A stretch of DNA of 64,000 bases, from IMG/VR virus record IMGVR_UViG_3300027963_000035, positions 186,001 to 250,000 of that record; one strand, 5' to 3'. Both the position numbers and the translations under genes were made by a program. The notes beneath the pieces are model-generated. The model was not told where the DNA came from. It saw only the letters and a program-made list of their open reading frames with translations, and ran no database searches. Positions 953-61,572 of this stretch are shown here, in pieces (the stretch's first letter is position 1; each line of letters begins with the position of its first letter).

Positions 953-972
953 CACCGTACCAGAAAGAAACT
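953..972 (-). promoter_or_regulatory. Conserved 20-bp phage promoter-like motif (1)
   Basis: + strand caccgtaccagaaagaaact; overlaps the TAG stop of the upstream ORF. Confidence 0.7.
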
Positions 973-1252
973 ACTTCGAGTTAATAGTCAAACTACCAAT
1001 AAAAGGCTTCAGTTTAAGTTTAGCCAATTTTGTAGTAGAACCAAGTTTAATATCAGAATCTTCTGAATGAACCACAATACCAACATTTTTCTTATCTGTA
1101 ATCATCCACAATACTTGTTTAGGATGATCTTCCCATTCAACAATCTTAGATTGTTCCAATAGCAATTGAACTTTAGCTTCTTTGCTTAATTCGATCACAG
1201 ATGGAATATCTGGTTGAACATCTGGATTATGAGGATCAGTCATTTTGTTTCC

Positions 1253-2590
1253 TTACTGTAAGTCATTGTATCGAATAACATCACCAAAAGGAGGCTTAAC
1301 ATCACTGGTCAATACCCACAATGTATTGAACTTTTTAGGATCTTCTCCAAATTCCCCATAACCATCTGTGAAAAATACACAATAATCAGGGCGAATCTTT
1401 TTGTCAACAAGATGCTTGAACACCGGAACGAAATCAGTCCCGCCACCACCCTGCAAACAAGGCAGGGGTTGATTGCTATTAATCCAACGACCAGTGTAAA
1501 CATCTGCATCGCAGTCCATAAAGTAAATATTAGCATTCAATTGCTTTCGGATACCATCAAGTTCCGAAATAGCATTTTTGAGATCTTCTTCACTCATGCT
1601 GCCACTTGTATCAATGGCGTATGCAATCTTAGGCTGATTAGGCCCGTGATAACTCGGGAACACGAAATCACGATCAAGGAATCGCTTGTTAGGCATACTC
1701 CAATTAGTATCGGCCTTGGCAAGACGGTCAGTTCCAAACCTGAGTTTCTCACGCAACTTACTAAGCCAATCAATCTTGGGACGAAGATGACTGACAATCA
1801 TACGCTCCATACCAGCAGGAAGCAAACCCTGACTCTTACTGATGTTGAAGGCGTCCGAAACTGCTCGACGTACATAGTCTTTCATTTCACGACTAATTTG
1901 TTCCTTATTCTTACCGTTCTTCTTAGGAAGAGGAACTCGTCGCTCACGAATATCTACATACTTCTTGCCATCACCATCACCATCTTGATTATCTTCGCCT
2001 TCATTTTCATCGAACGATTCAATAAAAATATCAATCTTGATTTTTGGAAGTTTATCGGCTTCCTTTTCAATGATATTGTAGATTTGCTCAACATTCATCT
2101 TGTCATACTTGTTCTCAGATGAATTAACATCCCAATTCTTATCAAAGCAAATCTTATCAATGATTGGAAAATACTCTTTGCTTCCAAACTGATAATACAA
2201 GAAAAGATTAATCGCATAGTCTGCGGCCTTATTCCACAGAACATGATTTCGATTCATAATTCTTGAACTATGTTCAAAAATAAAGTGACCAATCTCATGT
2301 GCAACAAGAAACAAGAATTGCTTATTGTCAAGAGAATTGACGAAATTGAGATTAAAGATGATATGGCCGTTCTTATCAATACCAGCGGTAGGGATAAAAT
2401 TATCATCCTTGGTCAAACTATATCGACACCTTTCACTAACACTTCCAAAGAATGGAAAATGATGAGCGAATCCAAAGATAATAACATCAAGTTTCTTTCG
2501 GAAACTATCCTGTTCTTCTTTGGTGACTGTGGAGAATAGATCGACTACTTCCTTCTTAGCCTTACTCTTTTTTGCAAGTGCTTGTGACAT
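1253..2590 (-). CDS. Metallopeptidase-like plus VWA domain protein (DUF2201-like)
   Basis: HEIGH zinc motif, AADYAIN, C-terminal MIDAS DTSGS...GGGGTDF...FTDG. Confidence 0.85.
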   Translation of the reverse strand: MSQALAKKSKAKKEVVDLFSTVTKEEQDSFRKKLDVIIFGFAHHFPFFGSVSERCRYSLTKDDNFIPTAGIDKNGHIIFNLNFVNSLDNKQFLFLVAHEIGHFIFEHSSRIMNRNHVLWNKAADYAINLFLYYQFGSKEYFPIIDKICFDKNWDVNSSENKYDKMNVEQIYNIIEKEADKLPKIKIDIFIESFDENEGEDNQDGDGDGKKYVDIRERRVPLPKKNGKNKEQISREMKDYVRRAVSDAFNISKSQGLLPAGMERMIVSHLRPKIDWLSKLREKLRFGTDRLAKADTNWSMPNKRFLDRDFVFPSYHGPNQPKIAYAIDTSGSMSEEDLKNAISELDGIRKQLNANIYFMDCDADVYTGRWINSNQPLPCLQGGGGTDFVPVFKHLVDKKIRPDYCVFFTDGYGEFGEDPKKFNTLWVLTSDVKPPFGDVIRYNDLQ

Positions 2591-2666
2591 TGTTATTTCT
2601 TCCTGATTATTTCGATTATTCCGCTCAGTATTCCGAGTAATGACATCATTGTAGTATGTTGCTCCT

Positions 2667-3725
2667 TTATGCGAGCATCATGCTACTGGAAATAAGTTCC
2701 TGATTCTTTTCAAGCCACTTACTCACCATATCGCTCTTGTAGCAAAGATCACGAATCTTATCATTGGTCAGAACACGACGAATAAACAACGCACCCGGCT
2801 CAGGACTAATATCAATTACGACCTTCATGCAGTTATCAAGAATCTTAGCAGGAGTCTTGCTAGAAAGCAAGGTGCTTGCAAGATTATTAGCAACAGCATA
2901 ACTGACGCTGATCCTCTTGTTATCTTCCTTCCACTTACTCTTTCCGGCAATAAGATCTTCCATGTTGGGAAGATTCTTGCAAATATCAAGATAACTCAGA
3001 AGTTCAGTAGCAGGACTTCCGACACAGGCACGAATATCGGCAAGATTCTTGCTACCGGCAAACAAATGCTTGCTGACATACCCCCAACTACGAGGATTCG
3101 TACTCACGCTATATTCATCGCTTCGATCTTGGAGAAGCAAATCCTTCCTCCAACTAATGAAGCCGATAACATCCTCATGAACATTGCTCTTGATTGCCCA
3201 ATCAACCCAAGTATCATAATCTGGAGTGTAATCATAGACCGCAAATCGGTCAAGAAGGGCTCCACTAAGAGGATGAACATGGCACTTATCTTCTGCCCGA
3301 TTACCAGCAGCAACAATATACCAATCCTTGCCAAGATGGTGAGGCCCAACCTTGCGGTCAAGAACCAACTGCAATGCCGCATTTTGAGTTGATGGGGGAG
3401 CAGTATTAATTTCATCAAGGAAGATAATTCCTCGACCCTGCCACGGGATGAACTCTGGCCTAACCCATTCAACATGGGTTGCAGTCCCCTTTTCATTCTT
3501 CTGAATGATAGGGAGTCCACGAAGATCAATACTGTCGAGGATATTAAGGCGAAGATCAATCATCATATCATCATCGCCATCACGACTCTGATGAACCTGT
3601 TCGCTCTTACCAATGCCGGGAGGGCCAAAGATCATCATAGGAAGATTGATGTTGCGATTACGACGAACAACATCAGTGATTCGGCCGTTGATAAGATTCT
3701 TATGAAGATTCAATCCGTCGCTCAT
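2667..3725 (-). CDS. MoxR-like AAA+ ATPase
   Basis: Walker A GPPGIGKS, Walker B IIFLDE, AAGN and LLDRF motifs; adjacent to the VWA gene. Confidence 0.88.
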   Translation of the reverse strand: MSDGLNLHKNLINGRITDVVRRNRNINLPMMIFGPPGIGKSEQVHQSRDGDDDMMIDLRLNILDSIDLRGLPIIQKNEKGTATHVEWVRPEFIPWQGRGIIFLDEINTAPPSTQNAALQLVLDRKVGPHHLGKDWYIVAAGNRAEDKCHVHPLSGALLDRFAVYDYTPDYDTWVDWAIKSNVHEDVIGFISWRKDLLLQDRSDEYSVSTNPRSWGYVSKHLFAGSKNLADIRACVGSPATELLSYLDICKNLPNMEDLIAGKSKWKEDNKRISVSYAVANNLASTLLSSKTPAKILDNCMKVVIDISPEPGALFIRRVLTNDKIRDLCYKSDMVSKWLEKNQELISSSMMLA

Positions 3726-3789
3726 TATTCAACCCTTGTAAAGTGGAAATTAGATTATCGCCAATAACCCTTGGCGACCTGCACTGGTC

Positions 3790-3809
3790 AACCGTACCGG
3801 AGGGAAACT
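3790..3809 (-). promoter_or_regulatory. Conserved promoter-like motif (2)
   Basis: aaccgtaccggagggaaact upstream of the AAA gene. Confidence 0.72.
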
Positions 3810-4151
3810 TTACCAAAAATTACTCATCCCAACTATCCCAACTATCTTCTTCTTTTTTGAAATATTCTTCAATCCACCAACCAACCCAGTTATTGATTTC
3901 TTTTTTCTTTTCTTCACTAAGATTTTCATACTTTATAAAACTACCGAGGAGATCATTTTTTCCATCGGCACTATAGAGTGTCATTTTAAAAGTATATCCA
4001 TAAATATCTGTATATCCACCTTCTTTTGGAGAATATTCTGTTTCTGGTTCGTAAGGAATATACTCGCAATCAACATCGCAAACAAAACTTGCGAGAATAT
4101 TTTCTCCGAACAATTCACCATTATCAGTTTCGATAATAACTTCACGAATAC

Positions 4152-5567: not shown

Positions 5568-5879
5568 TTATCGAAGTTGTTCCGAAAGCACAGTATATGC
5601 TGCAATAATTTTTTTAGCAACTATCGGATCACCACCTCTATCTGGGTGGTGAATTTTCATTAGATTTCTATACGAATTATTCAGCATTTCAATGGTGGGC
5701 ATTTCATTAAAACCCATCACAGAAAGAGGATTATTATTCTTGATTTGCTTTCTGGCTTCATCAAGATTCATCTTTTCTGTAAAAGTTTGGTTCCACTCTT
5801 TTACATTTCCCCTGCCGTGTGAATCGTCATAGGTTTTATAGCGAGAAAAAATATCACTAAAGTTTCTTTTCTTAGCCAT
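5568..5879 (-). CDS. DnaJ (J-domain) protein
   Basis: C-terminal YRNLMKIHHPDRGGD...IIAAY with HPD motif; start placed at ATG 5879. Confidence 0.8.
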   Translation of the reverse strand: MAKKRNFSDIFSRYKTYDDSHGRGNVKEWNQTFTEKMNLDEARKQIKNNNPLSVMGFNEMPTIEMLNNSYRNLMKIHHPDRGGDPIVAKKIIAAYTVLSEQLR

Positions 5880-6218: not shown

Positions 6219-6238
6219 AACCGTACCAGAGGGAAACT
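6219..6238 (-). promoter_or_regulatory. Conserved promoter-like motif (3)
   Basis: aaccgtaccagagggaaact. Confidence 0.72.
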
Positions 6239-7032: not shown

Positions 7033-7725
7033 TTATCCAATCCCACTAGTATTCTCCTTCAAGAAATCTTGACCATAAGTTTCAATCCAGCACTTAGCAG
7101 GATTATAATAACTTTGCTGCTTTGCCATCGCACTCAACAATATTTTTTTGTGAAAATCCTTCTTATCTTTTTCTTTAAGAATCTTCATATATTCTTGTAT
7201 CTTAGTATATCCTTGGTCTAAAATCCATTTTTCTGCCATCTTCCACCTTCTATTTTTCAAGAAGGTTTTTGCATAATCAACATTCCTGCTTGAACAAGCA
7301 ATCTTATTTTCAACTGACTTTTTGAGTCTTTCTTTTGAAATGTTTTTTGCATAAAGAAAACTATAATTAGTATCCCAACGGGGATTAAAAATAGATCCCT
7401 CTGCTTTATTATTCTCAGCGAGTTTGAACCTTCCCTTGATAACAAACCTTGAATAAGAGTAACTGCTATATGCTTCTTTTGCGATAATAGATTCTGCTTC
7501 CGGCCAACGCTTTTTCAATACATATCGAGCATAAAGATAACTACTTCGGGGACATTGAAGAATTGTTTTCTCAGCCTTGGGCCAAGGCTTCATCAGAACG
7601 TATCGAGCATATTCACATGCCTTATGTGCTGCTTCGTATTTGTAAGGAATAGCATTAAGAATAATATTTTCTGCTTGCTTATTCTTCCTTGAAACATACA
7701 TATCAATTCTAATTCTCATACTCAC
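7033..7725 (-). CDS. Helical repeat protein (YARYVLKKRWPEAE family)
   Basis: About 24-aa repeats similar to those of 33518..34396. Confidence 0.65.
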   Translation of the reverse strand: MSMRIRIDMYVSRKNKQAENIILNAIPYKYEAAHKACEYARYVLMKPWPKAEKTILQCPRSSYLYARYVLKKRWPEAESIIAKEAYSSYSYSRFVIKGRFKLAENNKAEGSIFNPRWDTNYSFLYAKNISKERLKKSVENKIACSSRNVDYAKTFLKNRRWKMAEKWILDQGYTKIQEYMKILKEKDKKDFHKKILLSAMAKQQSYYNPAKCWIETYGQDFLKENTSGIG

Positions 7726-8241
7726 AATCCTTGCTTGTAATTAAGTGTATTATTTTCCCAATTTTTATTCTTTTCAAAACTACTCAATATCTTCCACTTA
7801 TCATATCTTGATTTCAAAAGTGGAAAGTCATCCATAAAGAAATAGAATCCAATATTCATTGGACATTTTCCGAATTTATGACCGGGACAACCACTACCTG
7901 TATGGAATCCCCTGAATCCTTTATAGCCAAAAAGATGCTGGTCTGCGTCGGTGAGATGCCCTATACGGCAATATGGATTTTGATTAGAATTTACAAGACA
8001 ACTAATACTACCGATCCAGCCGTTATATCCCGTTGGTATATGTTTCTTATAACCGCCCCAATTAGTTTCTTCATTCAAAGGAGATCCATGATAATTGCTA
8101 ACGGTATCAAATCTTAATTCTATTTTAAGATTTGATATTGCGGTATCATAGAATTCTTTCGATTTAGTGACAAGCATATCGCCAAGATCACTAACCCGCT
8201 CCAGATTAAGCCGGATATAATCGGAGTTTTCCATATCCTCA

Positions 8242-8261
8242 AACCGTACCGGAGGGAAACT
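8242..8261 (-). promoter_or_regulatory. Conserved promoter-like motif (4)
   Basis: aaccgtaccggagggaaact, 7 nt from ATG 8234. Confidence 0.72.
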
Positions 8262-10340: not shown

Positions 10341-10718
10341 TTAGACTGAAACTTCTTCTTCGTCTTTCATTTCAAAGACTGTGGGGGCTTTAAAATCCCT
10401 ATTTCCCGTCATCCAACTCTTGATCTTCATTTCACGAAAGTAATCACTAACTGTGGGGATAAATCCCAAATCTTCTTTAACGTGCTGTTCACCAATAAAA
10501 CGAACAGGAATTTCTCTGCCGTTACTATTGGTGATTGTAATGCCGAAAATCTTTTCACACATAAAGATTCCTTCGCTATGATGCCTTAAAGCACGATGGC
10601 GAATATCGGCCATATGACTCTTGCTTTCATCAAACCAATCATGAATGGCCTGATAATCGGCGGGAATTCCTCCCCACTTTTTAGCACTACTGATAGAGTG
10701 ATGATATGGGTGAGACAT
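10341..10718 (-). CDS. Conserved His-rich phage hypothetical protein
   Basis: HPYHHSISSAKKWGG...HRALRHH...GEQHVKEDLG. Confidence 0.6.
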   Translation of the reverse strand: MSHPYHHSISSAKKWGGIPADYQAIHDWFDESKSHMADIRHRALRHHSEGIFMCEKIFGITITNSNGREIPVRFIGEQHVKEDLGFIPTVSDYFREMKIKSWMTGNRDFKAPTVFEMKDEEEVSV

Positions 10719-10993
10719 TACTTCAGCCTCTTGTTCTTAGGACGATTATCGGCAATGGCAGTATTGCCGTGAATCTCACTAGGATCAAGATTACAACCGT
10801 TCAAAAGATGCTTGCAATATCGGCGGCTACAATATGCAGGGCAAGAACAACCCCAACGACCAGATTCCTTATTCTGTGCAACAATATAGATGCGATTGCT
10901 GCTTTCGCTGCGAATCTGAATACGGTTAGTCCACTGTGCATTATCTGGCAGACTAACACCACCAGCCGGCATACGAATCGTAATATCACTCAT
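10718..10993 (-). CDS. SWIM zinc-finger protein
   Basis: CSCPAY...CKH motif. Confidence 0.7.
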   Translation of the reverse strand: MSDITIRMPAGGVSLPDNAQWTNRIQIRSESSNRIYIVAQNKESGRWGCSCPAYCSRRYCKHLLNGCNLDPSEIHGNTAIADNRPKNKRLK

Positions 10994-11032: not shown

Positions 11033-11052
11033 AACCGTACCGCAGGGAAACC
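11033..11052 (-). promoter_or_regulatory. Conserved promoter-like motif (5)
   Basis: aaccgtaccgcagggaaacc. Confidence 0.68.
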
Positions 11053-13117: not shown

Positions 13118-13137
13118 AACCGTACCCGAAAGAAACT
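13118..13137 (-). promoter_or_regulatory. Conserved promoter-like motif (6)
   Basis: aaccgtacccgaaagaaact, back-to-back with a sigma70-like promoter. Confidence 0.7.
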
Positions 13138-18295: not shown

Positions 18296-18736
18296 TTATT
18301 TTAGGTGTTCAATAATTTTTTCTGTAATCGGAACGGTCAATCCTATGTTTTCATCGGTTTGAAAAAAACTTCCTTCAATACAAGCATCATCAAAATCATC
18401 TAATATTGCAAACTTTTGTGCTTGATTGTTATTTAGCCATGCCTGTATTTCTTCGTTTCTCCTGACCCATCCACCTTCTGTCCATCCTTCTGACCTTTCA
18501 ATTACGGGAGTGCAATCAAAAAGTTCAAGTCCATGTTGACTGAGTGCTTGAATAACAATATTTTTATCTTTTTCTTGAACTCTCCAAGTTGAAGAAAGAA
18601 CAATTTTTGCTTCTGTTTCTCTGACAATTCTTGCGACAAGAGCCACAAGAATGTTATCAATAAAATCAAAACCAAACTTTTTTATTGTTTTTGGAGTGTT
18701 TAGAACCCCATCAACATCTAAGAAAATGATTTTCAT
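18296..18736 (-). CDS. HAD-family phosphatase (RNA-repair-associated type)
   Basis: IIFLDVDGVLN, IVLSSTWR, FAILDD. Confidence 0.8.
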   Translation of the reverse strand: MKIIFLDVDGVLNTPKTIKKFGFDFIDNILVALVARIVRETEAKIVLSSTWRVQEKDKNIVIQALSQHGLELFDCTPVIERSEGWTEGGWVRRNEEIQAWLNNNQAQKFAILDDFDDACIEGSFFQTDENIGLTVPITEKIIEHLK

Positions 18737-18757: not shown

Positions 18758-18777
18758 AACCGTACCGGAGGGAAACT
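18758..18777 (-). promoter_or_regulatory. Conserved promoter-like motif (7)
   Basis: aaccgtaccggagggaaact; overlaps the upstream TAG stop. Confidence 0.72.
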
Positions 18778-22762: not shown

Positions 22763-22765
22763 ACG

Positions 22766-29188: not shown

Positions 29189-29215
29189 TTTACTTGTTAT
29201 GGACACCCTGTTCGT

Positions 29216-48249: not shown

Positions 48250-48879
48250 TTAAAACCTATACTTCCTTGAAGGATGACGGAATTTTATTTGCCAACTATT
48301 ATTGCTTTTTTGACCAGCACAATCCTTTAGGACGCTATCTCTCTTTTTTAACACAAAGCCTTCATCAACATCTTTATCTTTGATATTGTTGAAGAGATCT
48401 AGGATACCTTCTTCGATATTTTTTGCAAGCCAAAATCTTGGCTCAATTTCAAAGTGGCTGTATTCTTCTTTTTTATTTTCAGGATGGAAAATATCTCTCA
48501 GAAGATTCTGCCGTTCAGTAAAAGTCTTTCCATAAAGTTCTTCGGAGTTATGGACGATAATATCAAAGATATAAACAGTGTCCTTGATGCTGGTTGTTTT
48601 GCTGTGAATTACTTCACCAACAAGAACGTGCCACTTATCGGCCGGAAGATACTTTGTGAAACAATCCCTAAAATAGTTGGAAAATTCCCACTGTTTATGG
48701 TTATCATTGTGGCGAGTCATTGCAATAAAATCTTTGGGATGATTGATTGCAAAGATGCTACAAGTGCCATTCTTCTTGTATTGCCCAGTATACCCCGACT
48801 TTTCAAACACCGGGATTCTATCCGGCGGCAGGGCATTTTCCGGGCGAGGCGGATAAAGATATTTAAAACTATCGTACAT
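48250..48879 (-). CDS. Minimal ATP-dependent ligase/capping-fold nucleotidyltransferase
   Basis: KKNG (motif I), VGEV, IFDII, EGFVLK, QIKF; no OB domain. Confidence 0.7.
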   Translation of the reverse strand: MYDSFKYLYPPRPENALPPDRIPVFEKSGYTGQYKKNGTCSIFAINHPKDFIAMTRHNDNHKQWEFSNYFRDCFTKYLPADKWHVLVGEVIHSKTTSIKDTVYIFDIIVHNSEELYGKTFTERQNLLRDIFHPENKKEEYSHFEIEPRFWLAKNIEEGILDLFNNIKDKDVDEGFVLKKRDSVLKDCAGQKSNNSWQIKFRHPSRKYRF

Positions 48880-49091
48880 AATTACTTTACTTTACATACT
48901 CCAAGTATTCATTTTCAACAAGGCAATCCCTACAAACCTTTTCCTTTGTATACGCACCGCACTCGCTGCAAAAACTATTCTTGTTATTAACGTAATTCTT
49001 CTTAATGACCTTTTCAAGAACCTTCTGGTCGATCCAATCTTTATCTTTCATGTTTCTCTCTATTGTTTTTTGAGTCTCTCTGACAAGAGAC

Positions 49092-49111
49092 TACCGTACC
49101 TGAGAGAAACT
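49092..49111 (-). promoter_or_regulatory. Conserved promoter-like motif (12)
   Basis: taccgtacctgagagaaact. Confidence 0.65.
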
Positions 49112-49649
49112 CTTCTTGATAAAATTCTTTGGCTTTATGTAATCTGTTGCCATTAAACGCACAAAGATTCGTCGGCCATCCTTTTCGCAAACAACACCTT
49201 TATGGGGATCTTTACTGGAGTATACAACAAAAGTTTCCTCGGGCACTTCAAAAGATTCTTTGTCCTTTAGAAGTAGCTCCAGAAATTTATTCTGCTCATC
49301 TCTCGAACTTGGAAAACCCTCTAAATTAAATTGTTCTTTAGGGAACAAAGTTCTATTTGGCCCGCTAACCCAAAGACAATATTGATTATTGCTTTCATAT
49401 TCACCATCAACATGATAGCGAACATCGACACAAGTCTTTTGATTTTTCTTGTGGTCTTTAATGATTAGATCCACAAGATAATATTTATGATCATTATTCA
49501 GATGAGTTTTCATTCTGAGTAGTAAATCAGAGAATTCAGGGAAGTCTTTCACGAATTTGTTAAATGAATAGTCTTTAACAAAGACTTCGCCAGACTTTGA
49601 TTTGAATTTATAGTTTTCTAGAATTTGCACGGCTTCTCTCCTGAACAGG

Positions 49650-49669
49650 AACCGTACCGGAGGGAAAGG
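49650..49669 (-). promoter_or_regulatory. Conserved promoter-like motif (13)
   Basis: aaccgtaccggagggaaagg. Confidence 0.65.
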
Positions 49670-52729: not shown

Positions 52730-54055
52730 TCACTCTTTGAAAAGCAGACCACGATCCGCTAACAGGCTGCAAATCTTTTTCATATCTGCTTTTTTGGGCT
52801 CATTATTTCCACGAGCCTTGAACTGAACAATGTTCTTTCTTGCAACTTCAACATTATAAATCATTTCATTGGTATTCTTGTCCATGACTGCAAATACAAC
52901 TGTCTTGGCCTTCAAAACATTGTCAGCATAACCGTGGATGCAGTTCTGCATAATATTAGTCCACTCTTTGAGATCGTAATTTGTATTGGGCATCAACAAT
53001 CTCATATCGTCAACTTCATGTTCATTGAGACTCCAAAAGTCAGGGAAATTTTCCTTGATTTTAAGATCGAATTCGGGATCCTGCAACTTGGCAGTTTCCT
53101 TGTTAAGATAGTTAAGGATTTCATCTGCGTTGTTTACAAGACCAACCTGTTGAACGTCCAGGTTAATGGTTTCCTTCAACCTTGGGTATTGATCCCCGAT
53201 TTCAATGAATGCGGCCTGACGAGTTGAACTCTTGAGAAAATTAAGGATTTTCTTTTGGTTGTAAGATCCGTCTTTTTCTCTTGTGTAATCTTTAATAAAA
53301 CTATTCAAACCGCTATAGCCGGCAATATCTCCGAAGTCAACGTTAAAGATATTCTTTTCAATAACTTCATAAAGATTGTCTGCATGAAGAGCATCCTTGA
53401 AGGCTTCTCCAAAAAAGAAAAACCTATAGTCCAAGAAATTATTATCAGGCTTGAAAATATTCTGCAGTGCAAGTTTCTTGAGTTTCTTAGCACTAAATCC
53501 GAAAACACTTTCAAGAACCTCATCAAGATTTTTACGATTGCTAAATGCTGTGAAATATTTCTCGGGACAATTAGCAATATTATAAAAATGAATATGAGAA
53601 TCAGATTGATTCTTTTTATTCAAAACACTATTTGTCTGATCTGAATTGTTGTTTGAATAAATCAGATAGAACCCATCCTCGGTAACAGGATAGGCACTGT
53701 TCTCAATAAGAGCCTGAATCATTTCAGAGGCAGCATGATCATCGACCCTATTCTTTAGATTATACCAGAAGTTGAAAAGACTTTTGAATACCCAACTTGT
53801 TTCTTTGAAAAGAAGAAACTGATTGCCCAATATGCTCGGGATAGGATCCTTGCCATAATGGACAAGTCCATCAATAACCGTGAAACCATCTTTATTGAGA
53901 TTCTTGGTAGGATTAATAGCATCCGCAACCAATTCAAACTTACCTTCATTCAGGTATGTCTTAATCTTATCATACCTATAGTCATTATTGCTAATGGTAT
54001 AAGTTTGACCCGAAGTATTTATAACAATTGAATTGGAAAGAAGATAGTATTTCAT
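52730..54055 (-). CDS. rIIB-like N-terminus fused to PcfJ-like C-terminus
   Basis: LFNFWYNL...YPVTEDGF (rIIB-like) and MQNCIHGY...YNVEV...IVQFK (PcfJ-like); follows rIIA. Confidence 0.6.
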   Translation of the reverse strand: MKYYLLSNSIVINTSGQTYTISNNDYRYDKIKTYLNEGKFELVADAINPTKNLNKDGFTVIDGLVHYGKDPIPSILGNQFLLFKETSWVFKSLFNFWYNLKNRVDDHAASEMIQALIENSAYPVTEDGFYLIYSNNNSDQTNSVLNKKNQSDSHIHFYNIANCPEKYFTAFSNRKNLDEVLESVFGFSAKKLKKLALQNIFKPDNNFLDYRFFFFGEAFKDALHADNLYEVIEKNIFNVDFGDIAGYSGLNSFIKDYTREKDGSYNQKKILNFLKSSTRQAAFIEIGDQYPRLKETINLDVQQVGLVNNADEILNYLNKETAKLQDPEFDLKIKENFPDFWSLNEHEVDDMRLLMPNTNYDLKEWTNIMQNCIHGYADNVLKAKTVVFAVMDKNTNEMIYNVEVARKNIVQFKARGNNEPKKADMKKICSLLADRGLLFKE

Positions 54056-54393
54056 GATTTCTTAGAGTTAATATAAAAGATCAATTCTTTTAGGATTTTT
54101 TCGTTTTCCTCGTCCACCTGCTCTGGTGTCATACCGTACCGGAAGGAACCTTTCGGGCTTATACCCGCACACAGCATCAGCGGATATTTGTCGTTGATCC
54201 TATCCTCCAAGACATTCAATTCCTTCATCAAGGACATTAAATTTTCTTTGACCTTGTAGTAGTTCTTAAATATATCACATTCGATTTTATCTTTATATTT
54301 TTCAAGTCTAAAAGTATGTTTAGTTTGAAAAAATTCATCGTTCTTATCAAAGCTTCTTCCACCACAAACGATTGTCCATATTTCTTTGATCAC
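54052..54393 (-). CDS. Small paralog of the rIIA C-terminal segment
   Basis: LEDRINDKYPLM...ELIFYINSK vs LENEINSKYPLL...DLVFYINNK. Confidence 0.6.
   Translation of the reverse strand: MIKEIWTIVCGGRSFDKNDEFFQTKHTFRLEKYKDKIECDIFKNYYKVKENLMSLMKELNVLEDRINDKYPLMLCAGISPKGSFRYGMTPEQVDEENEKILKELIFYINSKKS
54132..54151 (-). promoter_or_regulatory. Conserved promoter-like motif (14, intragenic)
   Basis: taccgtaccggaaggaacct upstream of 52730..54055. Confidence 0.55.
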
Positions 54394-54404: not shown

Positions 54405-56579
54405 TTAGTTCACCTTGGACTTATTATTGATATAGAATACAAGATCATTCATTTCCCTATTCTTACGACCAGCCTCATCACGATCATGACCGTGACCATA
54501 ATATCCATAACCATAATTCATGCCGGTCGAGATACACCTCAGAAGCGGATACTTTGAGTTGATTTCGTTCTCCAATTTATTCATCTTATCAAGATTGCCA
54601 TTAATTGTGGCATACTGTGGGTAGAGGCTGATGATACGGTCGGGGATATCCGCACGAGCAGCAGGCCTACCCGTTTCCTTGATTCCACCCTTGATTTCAA
54701 AGTATTCCCTGAGTTTGGGACATTCGACTCTATCAATGAACTTCCTCATAAAATCAAGAGTGTTGCTTGCTTGACGATAAACAAAGTTCTCAATAACCTT
54801 ATCATCCACTTCGATATAATCAGGAAAACTCTCAATTACATCTTCGTAAGTATGAACATTGTCCGCAGAACCAACGATCAAGGCATAATCCTTCTTAGAA
54901 CACTTGATCACGGTATATTTGCCGTGATTGATGATAAACTTGACATTATCTTCAAAAGTTTCATCGTGATACATTTCATCGCCCGAGAAAGGAACGACAA
55001 CGAATTCACTAGATGAACTTTCGATTTCATCGAGAGTAACATCCTTCTTAGTACCAGAAGCCAATTTCTTGCTGCTGTAGGCACTACTAAGCATAATCTC
55101 CCGATAACTAATCTTGCCAGCCTCTCTCTTTTGCTTGTAACTCACCCTGTTGTGGGGAAGATCAAGCATATATTTAGCACCAAGATGTTCCGTAAAACGC
55201 TTTTGCTGATCGGTGTTATAACCTTCGATGCAATATACCGCAGTAACGCTCTGGTTGTCCGCAAAATACTTCTTGATCTTTTCTTTGATAGTATATCTTG
55301 GGTTTCGACCATCATCAAGAATAAAACAAGACTTCAAGGCTTGATCAATCTCAATAGGATGGTTTTCCTCAATCTTCAATACGCTTCGAGTCTTCTGTTG
55401 CTTGAGGTGATACTTATTGATACGGCAACCATCAAAACTCGTAGAAACAAGACGACCGCTATTATACTTATAATCAAAACCATCCTTCTTGAAGGCAAAC
55501 TCAATCTTTGTTGGAAGTGATGCAAAGTTAAAGATACACTTCACACTAAAGTAGAACTTGATATATTCTTCAATAGTGGCAAAATCCTTGCCAAGTTCAT
55601 CATCAACACAAGATACAAGACTCTTGATGGCCTCACCGCAAATATCATTTACCTTCTTCTTGCTATCATCCTTGTCGCTAACACTTTCACGAGTAGCACT
55701 GATTTCAAGAATTCCGTTATCAACTTCAACAAAACTCATATGAGTTGCATATGAAGAATTCCTGAGAGCATTTACATTGGCAGAAAGTTCATGAGATGCA
55801 AATTTATTGATGCTATATGGGATCTTATCAATAAGGACAAAGATGTCAGCGTGATAAGAATCAAAAAGACGCTTGATGAAATCATCCTTATGAAGTATAA
55901 ACCAATTGCCGTTCTTGAATGAAATATTCTTACTAGAATCTAGCCAAGAAGCAGGAATCTCCAGTTTGGTGATTCCCTTCAATTCCGGCTTTACATCCCA
56001 AAAGAAAGTGCAGCGATAAACAGCATAGACAAACTGTTCAATATCGGACTCACGAATTGGAATCTGGACTTCGACACCATTGGGTTCATTGGTGTCATCC
56101 TCACTAATGAGTTCAAGAGTACCATTGCTATTCTTGCCGGTATGGGCAATATATGAACGAAGCTTACCATTGTAGTAACTAAGAATGGTAAAACTATCGG
56201 TGTATGCCCATGCACTTTTGGCTCCGATGCCGAAACCACCAGTCTGGACATTATCGGCACGTTTTGTGCTGCTTCCATAATTGACGAAAACATCCTTGAC
56301 ACGTTCCGGACTAAGACCAGTACCATAATCCCTGATCTTAAGAACGCTATCCAACTTGGTGGGAAGCGTAACAGAAACCGGAGTATCACTATTGCCTGAA
56401 TCACGGTGGCTATCCCGTGCATTGCAAAGATATTCCTGAGTCAGAGTCCGAATAGGATTTGCATAAAGCCTATTTCGGAGGATATCAATGATAGTGCTAA
56501 CATCGCCAATTCCAAATTCAATGGATTCGGCATTAAAGTTGTTAGTCTTGAGATTGGAACCGTTCGTATTGATCTTCAT
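54405..56579 (-). CDS. rIIA: rIIA-like GHKL ATPase protein
   Basis: LYANPIRTLTQEYLCNARDSH, IRDYGTGLS, YGSSTK, GGFGIGAKSAWAYTDSF. Confidence 0.82.
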   Translation of the reverse strand: MKINTNGSNLKTNNFNAESIEFGIGDVSTIIDILRNRLYANPIRTLTQEYLCNARDSHRDSGNSDTPVSVTLPTKLDSVLKIRDYGTGLSPERVKDVFVNYGSSTKRADNVQTGGFGIGAKSAWAYTDSFTILSYYNGKLRSYIAHTGKNSNGTLELISEDDTNEPNGVEVQIPIRESDIEQFVYAVYRCTFFWDVKPELKGITKLEIPASWLDSSKNISFKNGNWFILHKDDFIKRLFDSYHADIFVLIDKIPYSINKFASHELSANVNALRNSSYATHMSFVEVDNGILEISATRESVSDKDDSKKKVNDICGEAIKSLVSCVDDELGKDFATIEEYIKFYFSVKCIFNFASLPTKIEFAFKKDGFDYKYNSGRLVSTSFDGCRINKYHLKQQKTRSVLKIEENHPIEIDQALKSCFILDDGRNPRYTIKEKIKKYFADNQSVTAVYCIEGYNTDQQKRFTEHLGAKYMLDLPHNRVSYKQKREAGKISYREIMLSSAYSSKKLASGTKKDVTLDEIESSSSEFVVVPFSGDEMYHDETFEDNVKFIINHGKYTVIKCSKKDYALIVGSADNVHTYEDVIESFPDYIEVDDKVIENFVYRQASNTLDFMRKFIDRVECPKLREYFEIKGGIKETGRPAARADIPDRIISLYPQYATINGNLDKMNKLENEINSKYPLLRCISTGMNYGYGYYGHGHDRDEAGRKNREMNDLVFYINNKSKVN

Positions 56580-56629: not shown

Positions 56630-56649
56630 TACCGTACCAAAAAGAAACC
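56630..56649 (-). promoter_or_regulatory. Conserved promoter-like motif (15)
   Basis: taccgtaccaaaaagaaacc. Confidence 0.68.
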
Positions 56650-56658: not shown

Positions 56659-57672
56659 TCAATCTAGGAGGGCAATAGCTTTATCATTCTCACCAGACAT
56701 AAAGAACTCAAAGAAATTTTCAATATCATTTGGCTCGAGAACACAGATTTTCATGATGAACTCAGGAAGAGAAATCTTTTCATTTTCTCTATACTGCTTG
56801 ATCAGGCAAAGAATTTTACGCCAAACTTCTGAACCAATTTGGATATATCTTGGTTCATCGCTTCTTTTATCAGCAAAACTATAAACAATTTTGAGTTCTT
56901 CTTCTGAAATATCTCTGCTACCATGAAGTGCAATACATTCAATTGCACCCTTCACTAATTCTTGGCAAAGAACTGCAAATGTTCTAGCGGCCGCAACAAC
57001 AGAAGGTTCATCTGAATCTTCTTCGTATTCCACCTTAGAACTACCCTGAACCAGCATGGAAGGATCCATCTTATCAACTATAGCTGAATAGTCAATCTTC
57101 CAATAAGAAAAAACTGTACCCACACTGATTTCATCATACAATTTAATCAATTCAGGGGATACTTCATCCAATTCATTTTTCACAAGATGGTGCATTGTAT
57201 AAAAAGCATGAATGCTGGCACCTTGGATAATTGAATTGATCAAGATCCTTTTATTGATCAGATCTTTGATATTTTGATCAAGAGAATCATAATCTACATT
57301 TTCAGGGAAGCTTTCTTCGGTATTATTTACTTCAATATTTTCATCATCATTGAGACTCGCATCAAGCAAATCTTCTGGAATTTCAAATGCTTCACAAACT
57401 GCCTTGATTGCAAGATCCCTAAGAACTTCTTCTTTGCCCTTTTCAACTTCAAGGGCTTTAAGGAAACTCATCGTCAAATTATTATGGTCAAACTTGATCC
57501 CAAGATTGTTCATTCTATCTTGAACAAACTCGTAACTACTCTTACTGAGATCGTGACCGAAATATACTAGATTCCTATTTTTCTTGAATACATGAAATTC
57601 AGAATCATTCTTCCTGAGATTAGTCCAAAAATTTCTAATACCAGGATTCACATGCAAAGAATTATTATACAT
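56659..57672 (-). CDS. Conserved large-phage hypothetical protein
   Basis: 337 aa; INKRILINSIIQGA...ELVKG. Confidence 0.6.
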   Translation of the reverse strand: MYNNSLHVNPGIRNFWTNLRKNDSEFHVFKKNRNLVYFGHDLSKSSYEFVQDRMNNLGIKFDHNNLTMSFLKALEVEKGKEEVLRDLAIKAVCEAFEIPEDLLDASLNDDENIEVNNTEESFPENVDYDSLDQNIKDLINKRILINSIIQGASIHAFYTMHHLVKNELDEVSPELIKLYDEISVGTVFSYWKIDYSAIVDKMDPSMLVQGSSKVEYEEDSDEPSVVAAARTFAVLCQELVKGAIECIALHGSRDISEEELKIVYSFADKRSDEPRYIQIGSEVWRKILCLIKQYRENEKISLPEFIMKICVLEPNDIENFFEFFMSGENDKAIALLD

Positions 57673-57814: not shown

Positions 57815-57834
57815 AACCGTACCAAAAAGAAACA
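57815..57834 (-). promoter_or_regulatory. Conserved promoter-like motif (16)
   Basis: aaccgtaccaaaaagaaaca. Confidence 0.68.
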
Positions 57835-58391: not shown

Positions 58392-59144
58392 TTAGACAAC
58401 AAAAGAATTGTTATTAAGATCGATTTCGTTTCTAACCTTTTTGAATTTCAAACCAATTATTACGTTTTTTGGATCATGATAACGCATATCATATTCATCC
58501 CCGCTAATAACCTCATGATCAATAAACTTTTCAGGCAACTTATCTTTAAAAACCACAGCCACTCTAGTATTATCAATATTGATTGCCTTTTGACATTCTT
58601 CAATATTATTTCCACTATATGAAAAAGTTAGATCATAATTATGATATTTCTTAGTTAAAGCAATTCTTCGATAGATCTTGCTGTACTCATAAAATTGGCA
58701 GTCACTAAATATCTCGAGAATATTCTTATCTCCAAGCGTAAAGATTTCAGGAGATAAATCACTTGTGTTATTTAATCTTATACTAAAATTATATCCAAGT
58801 TTCTTAGCCTTACTTCTTGTTGATTCAATTTCATCAATCATCCAACTCATGAAATAATCACGCTCTTGAAAAAAGAGCCTTGTCTTTGCAATTCTAGACT
58901 TATTGATATTATTCTGCTTATGATCTATGCGATTAAGTCCAGATTCATGCAAGCAAGCAATTGTGCATTCTTTTGTTCTTCCTGCACAAACTTCAAATCC
59001 AGATGTATTTGCAGGAGATAAATACAAAGAATATGTAAGTTCGTTATATTTAAATGCCTTAGAATGCTTGGCAGTCATATTGACGCTGCCCAAGTAACTA
59101 ATGCCAGTTTCTTTGATTGCTTTGCTTTTGTTTTTGTATATCAC
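58392..59144 (-). CDS. GP88-like phage protein
   Basis: CAGRTKECTIAC, IRLNNTSDL, FYEYSK, YDLTFS, GDEYDMRYHD. Confidence 0.75.
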   Translation of the reverse strand: MIYKNKSKAIKETGISYLGSVNMTAKHSKAFKYNELTYSLYLSPANTSGFEVCAGRTKECTIACLHESGLNRIDHKQNNINKSRIAKTRLFFQERDYFMSWMIDEIESTRSKAKKLGYNFSIRLNNTSDLSPEIFTLGDKNILEIFSDCQFYEYSKIYRRIALTKKYHNYDLTFSYSGNNIEECQKAINIDNTRVAVVFKDKLPEKFIDHEVISGDEYDMRYHDPKNVIIGLKFKKVRNEIDLNNNSFVV

Positions 59145-59179: not shown

Positions 59180-59199
59180 CAACGTACCAAAAAGAAACT
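59180..59199 (-). promoter_or_regulatory. Conserved promoter-like motif (17)
   Basis: caacgtaccaaaaagaaact. Confidence 0.6.
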
Positions 59200-59421: not shown

Positions 59422-60507
59422 TCATTCTTCTTCTGCTTTAAACTTTAATTGTGTTTGCTGGCACTCTTCTTTTGAGATGTCATTCCTAACACCCAAATAA
59501 ATAGGTTGATATAGAGAACCAGATTGCTTTCTGGCGTAGAGGTATTTTACCTCTACGATTTCACCCACATTCGGTACATCGAAATTAACAGGAATGGTTA
59601 CATTTCCGGCCTTCACAAGTTTCTTTCCCTTGTAAAGACCAATAGCAGCACTACGCTTTTTATTAATTTCGGTAACCACACAACTACACGTACTATAAAA
59701 CTTGTACTTCAAATAGTTTCCGCCACTTGCAGGGCGACCAATATTATAGTGAGCATCAATATGCTTGAAGACAACTCCTTCTTTGTTTTCTTTAAGCAAA
59801 CTGTCATAAACCTCACGCTTGTCTTTCTTTTCAAGATAAAGAGGAGTATGAATAATATTCTCAGATTCAATGTACTTAAACAAAGTTTTGAGATATTTCA
59901 TCCTCTCAATTAAACTTTTCTTCCTAAGACATTCACTGCGATATTCGAGAATATCAAAAACGTGCAAAGTCTCACCAATCAGTTCACCATCAACTAAGAA
60001 ATTATCATCAAACTTAGTGACAACATTCCAAATCACAGTAGGAATGCTGATCCTTTTGCCCTTACGATTAATTCCGTGGGGAGACTGATCCTTTTCCTTA
60101 CCCAACATAAACCGGACACCATCAAGTTTATGTTGGAGAGCCCAATTATCATCATTAATAAGCTTTTCAGCTTCATCTTGACTAATTGGATTTAAGAGAA
60201 CGCACTGTATCTCATTGGGAGTATCAGGCAGATCATCACTCACAACAGGAATTTCAGAGGGATTGGCATTTTCAACAAACCTATATCCCTTGCTCGTTTT
60301 TTCCTTTACAAGATTATTAAAAATAGTCTTGGCATCTTCAAGAGTAGTTGGACTTTGGGTTTTACTGCCTGTTTTCAAGGCACTTCCCCTGCGTCCATAA
60401 CTAAAATTCACAACATATCCACTGCTGATATCTTCAATGGTGGTGTGATAAACTTTGTCGCTGGCGCCTTCTTTATAATACAGATTGGCAGATTCGATCA
60501 CAGACAT
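59422..60507 (-). CDS. WGR-domain ATP-dependent DNA ligase
   Basis: SDKVY...YGRRG...EKTSKGY (WGR-like), KLDG, DGE, FDIL, EGVVFK, C-terminal OB-like region. Confidence 0.85.
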   Translation of the reverse strand: MSVIESANLYYKEGASDKVYHTTIEDISSGYVVNFSYGRRGSALKTGSKTQSPTTLEDAKTIFNNLVKEKTSKGYRFVENANPSEIPVVSDDLPDTPNEIQCVLLNPISQDEAEKLINDDNWALQHKLDGVRFMLGKEKDQSPHGINRKGKRISIPTVIWNVVTKFDDNFLVDGELIGETLHVFDILEYRSECLRKKSLIERMKYLKTLFKYIESENIIHTPLYLEKKDKREVYDSLLKENKEGVVFKHIDAHYNIGRPASGGNYLKYKFYSTCSCVVTEINKKRSAAIGLYKGKKLVKAGNVTIPVNFDVPNVGEIVEVKYLYARKQSGSLYQPIYLGVRNDISKEECQQTQLKFKAEEE

Positions 60508-61001
60508 TATGATTCCTTTATTATTCAATTCCATTCGTGAGAACATTTAAGAAATAAATTAGAAAAATTACCTTCACTACCATATGTTTTACCAAATTCA
60601 ACCCATTCTTTAAGAATAGCAGTATCTTCGGAAAATCTTTCTATTTCCGAATAATAGCCTGTTTCATATGGAAGAAACTTGCTGCAGTGAGTCATTGTTA
60701 TTGCTTCTATCTTTTTAACAAAAGATCCATCTTTTTCATAAAGACTCATCCAAGATTCAGCAACAAAAAGATACTCAACAAGTTGTTTTTCAATTATCTG
60801 ATATCTGATAAAGTCGGCAAATTTTTCTTTATCATCAGGCGAATTAAAATCTGCTGAATATACATTGATTTCAGAATCTGTATATTCAGCGATAAGAGCC
60901 GGGGATAAATACCCGTCTTTTGCGAAATTAATTCCTGCGCAATTTTGAAATACTTTTATTTTATCACTAAGCATAAAATCTCGATTTGATTTATTAAAAG
61001 A

Positions 61002-61036
61002 TAAGACCCGCCCTAAATTGATTAGGGCGGGTCTTA
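61002..61036 (-). terminator. Intrinsic terminator
   Basis: TAAGACCCGCCCTAA/TTAGGGCGGGTCTTA. Confidence 0.72.
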
Positions 61037-61105
61037 AGCAGATAACAGGAATTGAACCTGTTCCACAACCACCTTGTTGCAGGCTCCCCACCTCTGCTGT
61101 AACGA

Positions 61106-61384
61106 TCAACCAGCCGCAGCGGCCAGAATAGCATTACAGGCGGCAACGTCAATACGGCGACCGACAGTACCAGCCTTGGTGAACTTCGGAACCTTGACAC
61201 CACGATCACGGAGAGCCTTGCAACGCAGGCTGACAGCACCAGCGGTCAGACCGAGTTTATCGGCAACTTCCGACTGCGTACCACCAGCAGCAGCCACCTT
61301 GGCAACCGTAGTGAGGAACGTTTCCATATCAACACTCTTCTTACCAGCACGACGACCACGAACATACTTCTTAGGACGAGCCAT
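61106..61384 (-). CDS. Small HTH DNA-binding protein (paralog of 57974..58243)
   Basis: SEVADKLGLTAGAVSLRCKALRDRGVKVPKF. Confidence 0.75.
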   Translation of the reverse strand: MARPKKYVRGRRAGKKSVDMETFLTTVAKVAAAGGTQSEVADKLGLTAGAVSLRCKALRDRGVKVPKFTKAGTVGRRIDVAACNAILAAAAG

Positions 61385-61449
61385 AATTACACCTCTTTTA
61401 AAAACTATTCTTTGTGCCAGCCTCACATGAGGACTGTCGCACGACCAAC

Positions 61450-61469
61450 AACCGTACCAAAAAGAAACT
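61450..61469 (-). promoter_or_regulatory. Conserved promoter-like motif (18)
   Basis: aaccgtaccaaaaagaaact. Confidence 0.72.
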
Positions 61470-61552
61470 TAAAGGATTAAAAAGGTTCCGTTTCAGCGGG
61501 AAACCCAATAAGACTCTAACCTCTCTTGACACGATCAATCGTCACAACAGTC

Positions 61553-61572
61553 AACTGTACCCAAAAGAAACA
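61553..61572 (-). promoter_or_regulatory. Conserved promoter-like motif (19, degenerate)
   Basis: aactgtacccaaaagaaaca. Confidence 0.5.

What the first reader, a model, noticed from the sequence alone, without database searches (positions are those of the whole stretch)
953..61572. A 20-bp strand-specific motif repeated 19 times: probable phage-specific promoter
Seen: AGTTTC-(pyrimidine-rich 5 nt)-GGTACGGTT on the minus strand at 953, 3790, 6219, 8242, 11033, 13118, 18758, 20441, 27776, 33187, 33521, 49092, 49650, 54132, 56630, 57815, 59180, 61450 and 61553. All copies I found have the same orientation, mostly within 80 nt upstream of minus-strand genes or RNAs. TACGGT keeps the TAnnnT -10 pattern, but the upstream GTTTC element is only about 7 nt away, unlike sigma70. 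Inference: recognised by a phage-encoded sigma factor, activator or RNA polymerase.
Basis: partly seen in the sequence, partly recalled or inferred. Interest (0 to 1): 0.7.

Follow-up and report, generated by a model that had tools for sequence, protein, structure and literature searches.

The report
Phage-specific promoter of a jumbo phage
A 20-base signal repeated about 60 times in front of the non-structural genes of an uncultivated freshwater jumbo phage is almost certainly a phage-specific promoter, probably read by a sigma factor that this phage lineage encodes itself; it is a new example of a well-known viral strategy.

Summary
The window is part of a 251-kb freshwater T4-related jumbo-phage contig. 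Its invariant core GGTACGGT occurs 51 times on the minus strand and once on the plus strand, only in the arm of small non-structural genes. A 95-98% identical 323-kb relative has 61 forward and 1 reverse.

Four things point to a promoter:
- The copies are co-oriented with the genes, about two-thirds lying 20-80 nt before a Shine-Dalgarno plus ATG. One precedes a tRNA.
- A pyrimidine-purine step lies 8-9 nt after the core.
- In 8 independent genes the ATG starts exactly on that purine, as in leaderless mRNAs. This places the start site there, the core at -16..-9 and GTTTC at -26..-22.
- There is no -35 element.

A relative with 72% portal identity keeps the motif before orthologous genes, but every copy reads GGTACGCT.

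No phage RNA polymerase, MotA/AsiA or gp55 was found. A divergent sigma-70-family gene occurs in these lineages. In five contigs of the window's own lineage it sits directly behind a GGTACGGT copy. Assigning the motif to this sigma is inference. There are no transcript data.

The parts
953..972 (-). Promoter copy with the AGTTTC box. Core 954-961, predicted start about 945, 47-nt leader to ORF 206..898 (230 aa).
3790..3809 (-). Promoter copy. Core 3791-3798, predicted start about 3782. Leads to ORF 2667..3725 (AAA_5 ATPase), then 1253..2590 (DUF2201/VWA).
   Evidence: The orthologous gene pair in G002 and L202 is also preceded by the motif.
6219..6238 (-). Promoter copy. Core 6220-6227, predicted start about 6211. 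Long leader (about 330 nt) or an uncalled small product before ORF 5568..5879.
8242..8261 (-). Promoter copy. Core 8243-8250. The predicted start at 8234 is the A of the ATG of ORF 7722..8234 (170 aa), a leaderless gene.
11033..11052 (-). Promoter copy. Core 11034-11041, predicted start about 11025, 32-nt leader to ORF 10718..10993 (91 aa).
13118..13137 (-). Promoter copy. Core 13119-13126, predicted start about 13110. A Shine-Dalgarno plus ATG lies 41 nt after the core (81-aa ORF).
18758..18777 (-). Promoter copy. Core 18759-18766, predicted start about 18750, 14-nt leader to ORF 18296..18736 (146 aa).
18791..18798 (-). Extra exact core GGTACGGT without the AGTTTC box, 32 nt upstream of the previous copy (tandem).
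20441..20460 (-). Promoter copy. Core 20442-20449, predicted start about 20433, 32-nt leader to ORF 20129..20401 (90 aa).
27776..27795 (-). Promoter copy. Core 27777-27784, predicted start about 27768. No minus-strand ORF longer than 85 aa follows for about 1.8 kb. tRNA-Tyr at 26602-26683 lies downstream.
33187..33206 (-). Promoter copy. Core 33188-33195, predicted start about 33179. ATG 35 nt after the core (120-aa ORF).
33521..33540 (-). Promoter copy overlapping the last codons of ORF 33518..34396. Core 33522-33529, predicted start about 33513. ATG 43 nt after the core (86-aa ORF).
42986..42993 (-). Extra exact core GGTACGGT with an atypical upstream part (CGTTTC directly abutting).
49092..49111 (-). 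Promoter copy. Core 49093-49100, predicted start about 49084. A small ORF follows, then ORF 48250..48879 (209 aa).
49650..49669 (-). Promoter copy (box CCTTTC). Core 49651-49658, predicted start about 49642, 12-nt leader to the GTG of ORF 49091..49630 (179 aa).
54132..54151 (-). Promoter copy (box AGGTTC) inside ORF 54052..54393. Core 54133-54140. The ATG of the PcfJ-like gene 52730..54055 lies 77 nt after the core.
56630..56649 (-). Promoter copy. Core 56631-56638, predicted start about 56622, 43-nt leader to ORF 54405..56579 (724 aa, weak GHKL ATPase match).
57815..57834 (-). Promoter copy. Core 57816-57823, predicted start about 57807. A 37-aa ORF follows, then ORF 56659..57672 (337 aa).
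59180..59199 (-). Promoter copy with variant core GGTACGTT (59181-59188), predicted start about 59172. Leads to ORF 58392..59144 (250 aa).
61450..61469 (-). Promoter copy. Core 61451-61458, predicted start about 61442, 58-nt leader to ORF 61106..61384. The operon continues to the DNA ligase gene 59422..60546.
61553..61572 (-). Promoter copy with variant core GGTACAGT (61554-61561), 103 nt upstream of the previous copy (tandem).

Best explanation
The motif is the promoter of one temporal class, most likely 'middle', of a T4-related freshwater jumbo phage. It drives the roughly 105-150 kb arm of small and non-structural genes. Its layout is an invariant 8-bp element GGTACGGT at -16..-9, a pyrimidine tract, an upstream box (AGTTTC at -27..-22 in the class seen in the window), and initiation on a purine 9 nt after the core. 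There is no -35 hexamer at canonical spacing. Host core RNA polymerase is most likely directed to it by a phage-encoded, divergent sigma-70-family protein of about 275 aa with regions 2 and 4. That protein's own gene carries the motif, which would give positive feedback after a first pulse from a host-type promoter. Shown: the anatomy, strand bias, genome distribution, conservation and lineage-specific core change, the leaderless ATG offset, and the existence and position of the sigma gene. My confidence that it is a promoter is about 0.85-0.9. My confidence that this sigma reads it is about 0.5.
For: Counts and strand bias:
- Window: 19 of 19 copies on the minus strand.
- Contig: core 51 minus, 1 plus.
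- G001: 61 forward, 1 reverse.
- Weight matrix: about 60 sites on the motif strand, at most 3 on the other.
- All copies lie at 146-250 kb of G000; none are in the structural arm. The single plus-strand copy lies in a plus-strand gene block.

Start-site evidence:
- Position 15 after the first core base is a pyrimidine in 43 of 51 sites and position 16 a purine in 48 of 51.
- An ATG opening an ORF of at least 40 aa sits exactly at position 16 in 4 sites of G000, 6 of G001 and 1 of G002. That is 8 non-orthologous genes (5 of G000/G001, 3 only in G001), plus one in G002 whose orthology I did not check. Almost none sit at positions 8-26 otherwise.
- One site drives a tRNA.
- Nothing is conserved where a -35 would lie.

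Selection:
- There are 0 differences in 388 core positions between G000 and G001, against 2-5% in the flanks.
- Orthologous genes of G001 and G002 keep the motif while the flanks are at random identity.
- G002 has GGTACGCT 38 forward and 0 reverse. L202, L203 and L291 have the same variant.

Other promoter classes exist: canonical TTGACA/TATAAT and ATATATW before structural genes.

The sigma:
- It matches Pfam regions r2 and r4 and passes the TIGR02937 cut-off.
- The family was found.
- In five contigs of the GGTACGGT lineage (L204, L205, L207, L211, L212) the gene lies 41-50 nt behind AAGTTTC..GGTACGGT. L212 is 99% identical to G001 in its flanks.
- The tryptophan pair of region 2.3 is replaced by K-V.

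Absences: no beta or beta', T7-type, MotA or AsiA hits.
Against: - There are no transcript data; no RNA runs were listed.
- The sigma gene is not on the window's contig, which ends about 65 kb short of that locus. In G001 the slot holds a 237-bp filler instead. At least one near-identical genome with 61 motif copies therefore lacks the gene there, though the contig is only about 64% complete.
- A sigma gene lying behind the motif fits equally well with the sigma being a product of this class that serves another class.
- More distant members of the sigma family (L208, L209, L292) show no clear motif in the 11-20 kb available.
- A 5-bp gap between the box and the core does not fit the usual spacing of sigma regions 2 and 4.
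Confidence: 0.55

Rival explanations
1. The promoter is read by host RNA polymerase with the host primary sigma, helped by a phage activator bound to the upstream box. This is the logic of T4 MotA/AsiA. The phage sigma serves a different class.
For: TACGGT fits TAnnnT, and T-G precedes it in 25 of 51 sites. Two upstream classes share one core, and they are segregated along the genome: 24 sites without AGTTTC lie at 146-160 kb, while the AGTTTC class lies at 150-250 kb, mostly beyond 160 kb. That is what alternative activators would give. The sigma gene lies downstream of the motif.
Against: No MotA or AsiA homologues were found. The invariant GG and CGG of the core are not explained by housekeeping-sigma contacts. 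The hexamer lies 2 nt further from the start than usual. The core changes from G to C in all copies of a sister lineage.
Confidence: 0.15
2. It is an early promoter read directly by the unmodified host holoenzyme of an unknown host whose consensus differs from that of E. coli.
For: The host is unknown. Early-type small genes follow the motif. Highly uniform strong early promoters occur in T4 (my own knowledge).
Against: Perfect TTGACA-N17-TATAAT promoters with Shine-Dalgarno genes occur on the same strand, so the host reads the canonical consensus. The lineage-specific core difference between closely related phages and the absence of any -35 also argue against it.
Confidence: 0.12
3. The promoter is for a phage-encoded RNA polymerase, either single-subunit or a divergent multisubunit type, whose gene lies in the unassembled part of the genome.
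For: About 20 bp of near-invariant sequence is typical of phage polymerase promoters. The contigs are 50-64% complete by CheckV.
Against: No beta or beta' hits were found in G000, G001, G002 or the complete 595-kb relative. No DFDGD or T7 motif A plus C occurs in any frame. Large unknown proteins turned out to be RCC1-repeat proteins, subtilases and similar. Conservation stops at -9 instead of running through +1. T4-related phages use the host enzyme (my own knowledge).
Confidence: 0.08
4. It is not a promoter. It is an RNA-level signal (a processing or stability site) or a polar DNA signal of the Chi or KOPS type.
For: The 8-mer is strand-specific and over-represented. Cleavage 8 nt after a motif could also create 5'-AUG ends.
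Against: The sites sit at gene starts, not scattered through coding DNA. Folding of the first 45 transcribed nt (positions +1 to +45) shows no structure enrichment (MFE -5.2 against -5.0 for shuffles); the motif itself was not folded, and by eye it can form at most a 3-bp stem. One site precedes a tRNA. The upstream box and pyrimidine tract are DNA-like promoter features, and terminator hairpins directly precede several copies.
Confidence: 0.05

Closest known systems
Promoters of phage-encoded sigma factors (Bacillus phage SPO1 gp28 middle promoters; phage phiEco32 gp36). Named from my own knowledge.
   Same: A phage-specific consensus unlike the host's is repeated before one temporal class of genes. 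Host core polymerase is redirected by a small phage sigma-70-family protein. In phiEco32 there is a long -10-type element without a -35.
   Different: The consensus is new (AGTTTC-N5-GGTACGGT). The box lies only 5 bp from the core. The start lies 9 nt after the core. The sigma shares no close similarity with characterised phage sigmas; its best named matches are generic RpoD/SigB models below their cut-offs. The link between sigma and promoter is not shown.
T4 middle promoters (MotA box at -30 plus a sigma-70 -10 element, with AsiA)
   Same: The genome is T4-related (gp20-like portal). The layout is an upstream box plus a TAnnnT-type element without a -35, placed before non-structural genes.
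   Different: There is no MotA or AsiA. The box sequence and position differ (-27..-22). The core is invariant over 8 bp.
T4 late promoters (TATAAATA, gp55)
   Same: A single, nearly invariant 8-bp element upstream of the start is the main determinant.
   Different: The sequence and the gene class differ. The structural arm here has its own ATATATW element. gp55-like genes were found only in more distant relatives.
T7-type phage RNA polymerase promoters
   Same: The repeat is about 20 bp, highly uniform and strand-specific.
   Different: No polymerase gene was found. Positions -8..-3 are unconserved. The promoter does not run through +1.
Autoregulated alternative (ECF-type) sigma factors
   Same: The sigma gene is directly preceded by the motif in five contigs, which is the pattern used to predict the cognate promoters of ECF sigmas (my own knowledge).
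   Different: The protein resembles group 1/2 sigmas in regions 1.2-2 and 4, not ECF sigmas. The promoter geometry is unlike GAAC-N16-CGTC.

Membership tests
Canonical sigma-70 housekeeping promoter | -35 hexamer (TTGACA-like) 16-18 bp upstream of the -10 hexamer | tested here: not met
   Information content is at most 0.12 bits at the positions where a -35 would lie.
Canonical sigma-70 housekeeping promoter | -10 hexamer TATAAT-like at -12..-7 | tested here: inconclusive
   TACGGT keeps T1, A2 and T6, but C-G-G is invariant and the inferred start puts it at -14..-9.
T4 middle promoter (sigma appropriation) | MotA and AsiA genes in the phage | tested here: not met
   PF09158 gave no hit. PF09010 gave only a 13-bit chance-level hit in G000. 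Searched in G000, G001, G002 and relatives. The contigs are incomplete.
T4 middle promoter (sigma appropriation) | MotA box TGCTT-type centred at -30 | tested here: not met
   The upstream box is AGTTTC at -27..-22, or TwGwwTyy in the other class.
T4 late promoter | TATAAATA element and a gp55 sigma | tested here: not met
   The core is GGTACGGT. phrog_234 and a local gp55 profile find nothing in G000, G001 or G002.
T7-type single-subunit RNA polymerase promoter | Phage gene for a T7-like RNA polymerase | tested here: inconclusive
   PF00940 gave no hit, but the control rang nowhere. No frame carries both motif A and motif C. The genome is incomplete.
T7-type single-subunit RNA polymerase promoter | Conservation continuous from about -17 through +1 | tested here: not met
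   The six positions after the core are unconserved, and they differ most between G000 and G001 (5%).
Promoter of a phage-encoded sigma-70-family factor | A sigma-70-family gene in the phage | tested here: met
   G002 L141:491-1330 has regions r2 and r4 and passes the TIGR02937 cut-off. Orthologues occur in the GGTACGGT lineage, including L212 with flanks 99% identical to G001. It is not on the window's own contig, and it is absent from the slot in G001.
Promoter of a phage-encoded sigma-70-family factor | That sigma directs initiation at the motif | not testable with these tools
   The complex-prediction job was not folded. No RNA data were available.
Autoregulated alternative sigma | The cognate promoter lies directly upstream of the sigma gene | tested here: met
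   AAGTTTC..GGTACGGT lies 41-50 nt before the ATG in L204, L205, L207, L211 and L212. This is not so in the G002 lineage, where the nearest copy is kilobases upstream.
Chi / KOPS-type polar DNA motif | Copies scattered through coding DNA irrespective of gene boundaries | tested here: not met
   Copies sit 0-80 nt before start codons in about two-thirds of cases and carry an upstream box.

The most novel reading that the evidence does not exclude
The motif defines a compact promoter geometry: an upstream box only 5 bp from an 8-bp core, and a start 9 nt after the core. It would be read by a sigma-70-family protein that has lost the region 2.3 tryptophan pair. This implies a mode of promoter engagement, or a box-binding partner, that differs from all characterised sigma classes. 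It would also give a naturally diversified set of orthogonal sigma-promoter pairs (GGTACGGT, GGTACGCT, GGTACGTC lineages).
Probability: 0.2. Interest if true: 0.7.

Novelty: new member of a known kind. Interest (0 to 1): 0.45.

Why it matters
The motif gives a transcription map for an uncultivated jumbo-phage lineage. It predicts about 60 start sites, operon boundaries, leaderless genes and three promoter classes. It also nominates a sigma-promoter pair that can be tested in vitro without the unknown host. The lineage-specific core variants offer a natural experiment on how sigma specificity evolves, and possibly orthogonal expression parts. The principle itself, phage-specific promoters read by phage factors, is textbook.

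Tried and rejected
- Megablast of the window against phage records gave nothing.
- The search for RNA-seq runs listed none, so starts could not be mapped. DNA runs are freshwater metagenomes.
- Searches for RNA polymerase subunits, T7-type polymerase, sigma r2, gp55, MotA and AsiA in G000 and G001 were all negative. PHROG and Pfam scans of 35 large or early-region proteins found no transcription protein.
- An HTH protein in G001 (L109 6186-7004) is not a sigma.
- A 5' hairpin at the transcript start occurs only in a subset and is not enriched.
- The recurrent AAAGGGTTG after some sites is a shared leader of three paralogous genes, not part of the motif.
- The 595-kb relative LR756511.1 lacks the motif and has a different element, T(A/T)TAAAGCTGTAC.
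- G009 looked like a motif-bearing genome without the sigma, but only its first 20 kb is related DNA.
- A full-text search for the core found only unrelated oligonucleotides.
- Prediction of a sigma-DNA complex was not folded and is no evidence either way.
- Correlating region 2.4 residues with the core variant gave no clear pattern, because residues also vary within the GGTACGGT lineage.


Full report
**Observation.** The pattern AGTTTC-N5-GGTACGGTT with up to two mismatches matches 19 times in the window. The matches are at exactly the coordinates given and all lie on the minus strand. Shuffles give 0.06 on average. The window is bases 186001-250000 of a 251,265-bp IMG/VR viral contig, G000, which CheckV rates about 50% complete. 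It comes from freshwater metagenomes.

The information lies mainly in an invariant 8-mer, GGTACGGT:
- It occurs 51 times on the minus strand and once on the plus strand of G000, against about 1.5 expected per strand.
- A weight matrix finds about 60 sites on that strand and at most 3 on the other.
- Two listed copies have one-base core variants.

**Genome context.**
- The portal protein is T4 gp20-like. The nearest database record is an uncultured 595-kb phage, LR756511.1, at 51% amino-acid identity.
- G000 has two parts. A 0-146 kb arm carries large structural and replication genes on both strands: portal, baseplate, tape measure, helicase and polymerase exonuclease. A 146-251 kb arm carries mostly small minus-strand genes plus DNA ligase, a MoxR-type ATPase with a VWA protein, PcfJ-like proteins, tRNAs and group I introns.
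- All but one motif copy lie in the second arm. The exception, on the plus strand at 112950, sits in a plus-strand gene block.
- A second contig, G001 (IMGVR_UViG_3300023174_000040, 323 kb), is 95-98% identical and extends about 70 kb beyond the end of G000. It has 61 forward and 1 reverse GGTACGGT.

**Anatomy.** Positions are counted from the first G of the core as 0.
- -11: A. -10 to -6: GTTTC. -5 to -1: pyrimidine-rich, with T at -3 in 48 of 51 sites.
- 0 to 7: invariant GGTACGGT. Position 8: T or A.
- 9 to 13: unconserved.
- 15: pyrimidine in 43 of 51 sites. 16: purine in 48 of 51. 17: mostly T.
- Nothing is conserved where a -35 hexamer would lie.

The upstream part falls into two classes that share the core:
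- AGTTTCyyTyy: 25 sites at G000 150-250 kb, all but one beyond 160 kb. This is the class seen in the window.
- TwGwwTyy, for example TAGAATCC or TTGATTTT: 24 sites packed into 146.4-159.7 kb, about one per 550 bp, each before one small gene.

**Evidence that it is a promoter, and where transcription starts.**
1. About two-thirds of the copies lie 20-80 nt before an ATG with a Shine-Dalgarno sequence. One copy is followed directly by a tRNA gene. Several follow a G+C-rich hairpin with a T tract that ends the preceding unit.
2. An ATG opening an ORF of at least 40 aa sits exactly at position 16 in four G000 sites, six G001 sites and one G002 site. That is eight non-orthologous genes in G000 and G001, plus one in G002. 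Between positions 8 and 26 there are otherwise only isolated cases. Position 16 is also the conserved purine after a pyrimidine. Leaderless genes need the AUG at the 5' end, so this places +1 at position 16, the core at -16..-9 and GTTTC at -26..-22. In the window the example is ORF 7722..8234.
3. Selection: the core shows 0 differences in 388 aligned positions between G000 and G001, while the adjacent positions differ by 2-5%. Because sites were chosen on the G000 side, roughly half of that contrast is ascertainment. Zero differences is still unexpected.
4. G002 (IMGVR_UViG_3300027741_000022, 187 kb) has 72% portal identity and 65-77% nucleotide identity in shared genes. It carries the same architecture before orthologous genes, while the flanks are at random identity. 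Every copy there reads GGTACGCT, 38 forward and 0 reverse.
5. The same variant occurs in three further contigs (L202, L203, L291). A more distant lineage (L206) has T-rich sequence followed by GGTACG(T/C)C, with GTACG 11 forward and 1 reverse in 20 kb.

A concerted one-base change across all copies of a lineage is what co-evolution with a lineage-encoded reader predicts. RNA-structure explanations fail: the first 45 nt after position 16 fold no better than shuffles.

**Other promoter classes in the same genome.**
- Canonical TTGACA-N16-18-TATAAT sites occur on the same strand. There is a perfect one at window 16388-16360. Several lie at the head of the arm in G001, directly before Shine-Dalgarno genes. 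Their total number is not above shuffles, so only individual cases are convincing. They indicate a host that reads the ordinary consensus.
- In the structural arm, 49 of 131 genes have ATATATW 7-50 nt before the start codon. This is reminiscent of T4 late promoters (my own knowledge).
- The GGTACGGT class is therefore a third, separate class.

**Who reads it.**
- No beta or beta' subunit, T7-type polymerase, DFDGD motif, MotA or AsiA was found in G000, G001, G002 or the complete 595-kb relative.
- gp55-like genes occur only in the more distant relatives W01 and G005.
- G002 encodes a 280-aa sigma-70-family protein with regions 2 and 4. It passes the TIGR02937 cut-off.
- Its family includes orthologues in the GGTACGGT lineage: P0017 (L204, L205), P0015 (L207), L211 and L212. 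In all five contigs the gene lies between a CsrA-like gene and IMPDH, 41-50 nt behind AAGTTTC..GGTACGGT.
- The flanks of L212 are 99.2-99.7% identical to G001, so this gene belongs to the same phage population.
- A TTGTCA-N17-TATATT site before the CsrA-like gene could give the first pulse.
- In the alignment, the tryptophan pair of region 2.3 is replaced by K-V and the 2.4 helix is divergent. This argues against a TATAAT-type specificity, an inference from my knowledge of sigma-70.

Caveats on the sigma assignment:
- G000 ends about 65 kb short of this locus.
- G001 has a 237-bp filler in place of promoter plus gene.
- In the G002 lineage the nearest motif copy is kilobases upstream of the sigma gene.
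- Distant family members show no clear motif in the short stretches available.
- W01 has a distant, split homologue of the family but no such motif.
- The position of the sigma gene behind the motif fits autoregulation, but it fits equally well with the sigma being a product of this class.

**Comparison with known systems.** The closest analogues are promoters of phage-encoded sigmas (SPO1 gp28, phiEco32 gp36) and T4 middle promoters. It fails the defining tests for canonical sigma-70, T4 late, T4 middle and T7-type promoters (see membership table). A 2025 paper describes freshwater 200-307 kb T4-related 'moraphages' with a sigma factor and no RNA polymerase, and reports no promoters (PMC12619734). 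Whether this phage belongs to that lineage was not tested. The frequent Shine-Dalgarno sequences here do not obviously fit the Bacteroidota host predicted for that lineage.

**Verdict.** The motif is real and is very probably a phage-specific promoter. It is a new member of a known kind. Interest is moderate.

Noticed in passing
window 29233-29890; also G002 (L142) 115370-117000: A tandem array of a 36-bp unit with two conserved 10-mers (GAGTGAACCA and GATTTTAACA on the transcribed strand) separated by short variable blocks. The period is 35-37, so it is not coding. There are about 18 copies in the window, ending at the start of the PcfJ-like gene 27869..29242, and about 45 copies in G002. Function unknown; it could be an iteron-like or protein-binding array.
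   Followed up: partly
window 22810-23003 (-) and 41827-42020 (-): Two Rfam group I introns of 194 nt with near-identical scores. The first overlaps an ARAGORN 'tRNA-???' call at 22765-22832.
   Followed up: no
window 16360-16388 (-); G001 35221, 30092: Perfect or near-perfect canonical TTGACA-N17-TATAAT promoters on the same strand as the motif. They are probably host-type early promoters.
   Followed up: partly
G000 0-146 kb (loci L009-L018): ATATATW lies 7-50 nt upstream of 49 of 131 genes of the structural/replication arm. This is a likely late-promoter class resembling T4 TATAAATA.
   Followed up: partly
L212:123-944; L204:8892-9716; G001 2906-3142: There is a presence/absence polymorphism of the sigma gene plus its promoter between near-identical genomes. 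L212 (flanks 99% identical to G001) has it, while G001 has a 237-bp filler with a terminator-like hairpin.
   Followed up: partly
G000 about 151332, 156491, 161840 (loci L019, L001): Three paralogous small genes share the promoter, a 5' hairpin starting at +1, an AAAGGGTTG leader and a conserved N-terminus.
   Followed up: partly
LR756511.1 (W01), mostly 0-100 kb: A different dominant motif, T(A/T)TAAAGCTGTAC, lies 11-15 nt before start codons (134 copies of GTACAGCT). The record also has two gp55-like ORFs and a sigma homologue split over two frames at 190508-191114.
   Followed up: partly
window 33618-34255 and 37722-37847: 78-bp repeats (about 8 copies) lie inside ORF 33518..34396, and a 42-bp unit is repeated three times at 98% identity.
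   Followed up: no
L209 6249-6509: An 86-aa protein with an RNA polymerase alpha C-terminal domain (PF03118) lies near a distant member of the sigma family, next to ClpX-like and CsrA-like genes.
   Followed up: no
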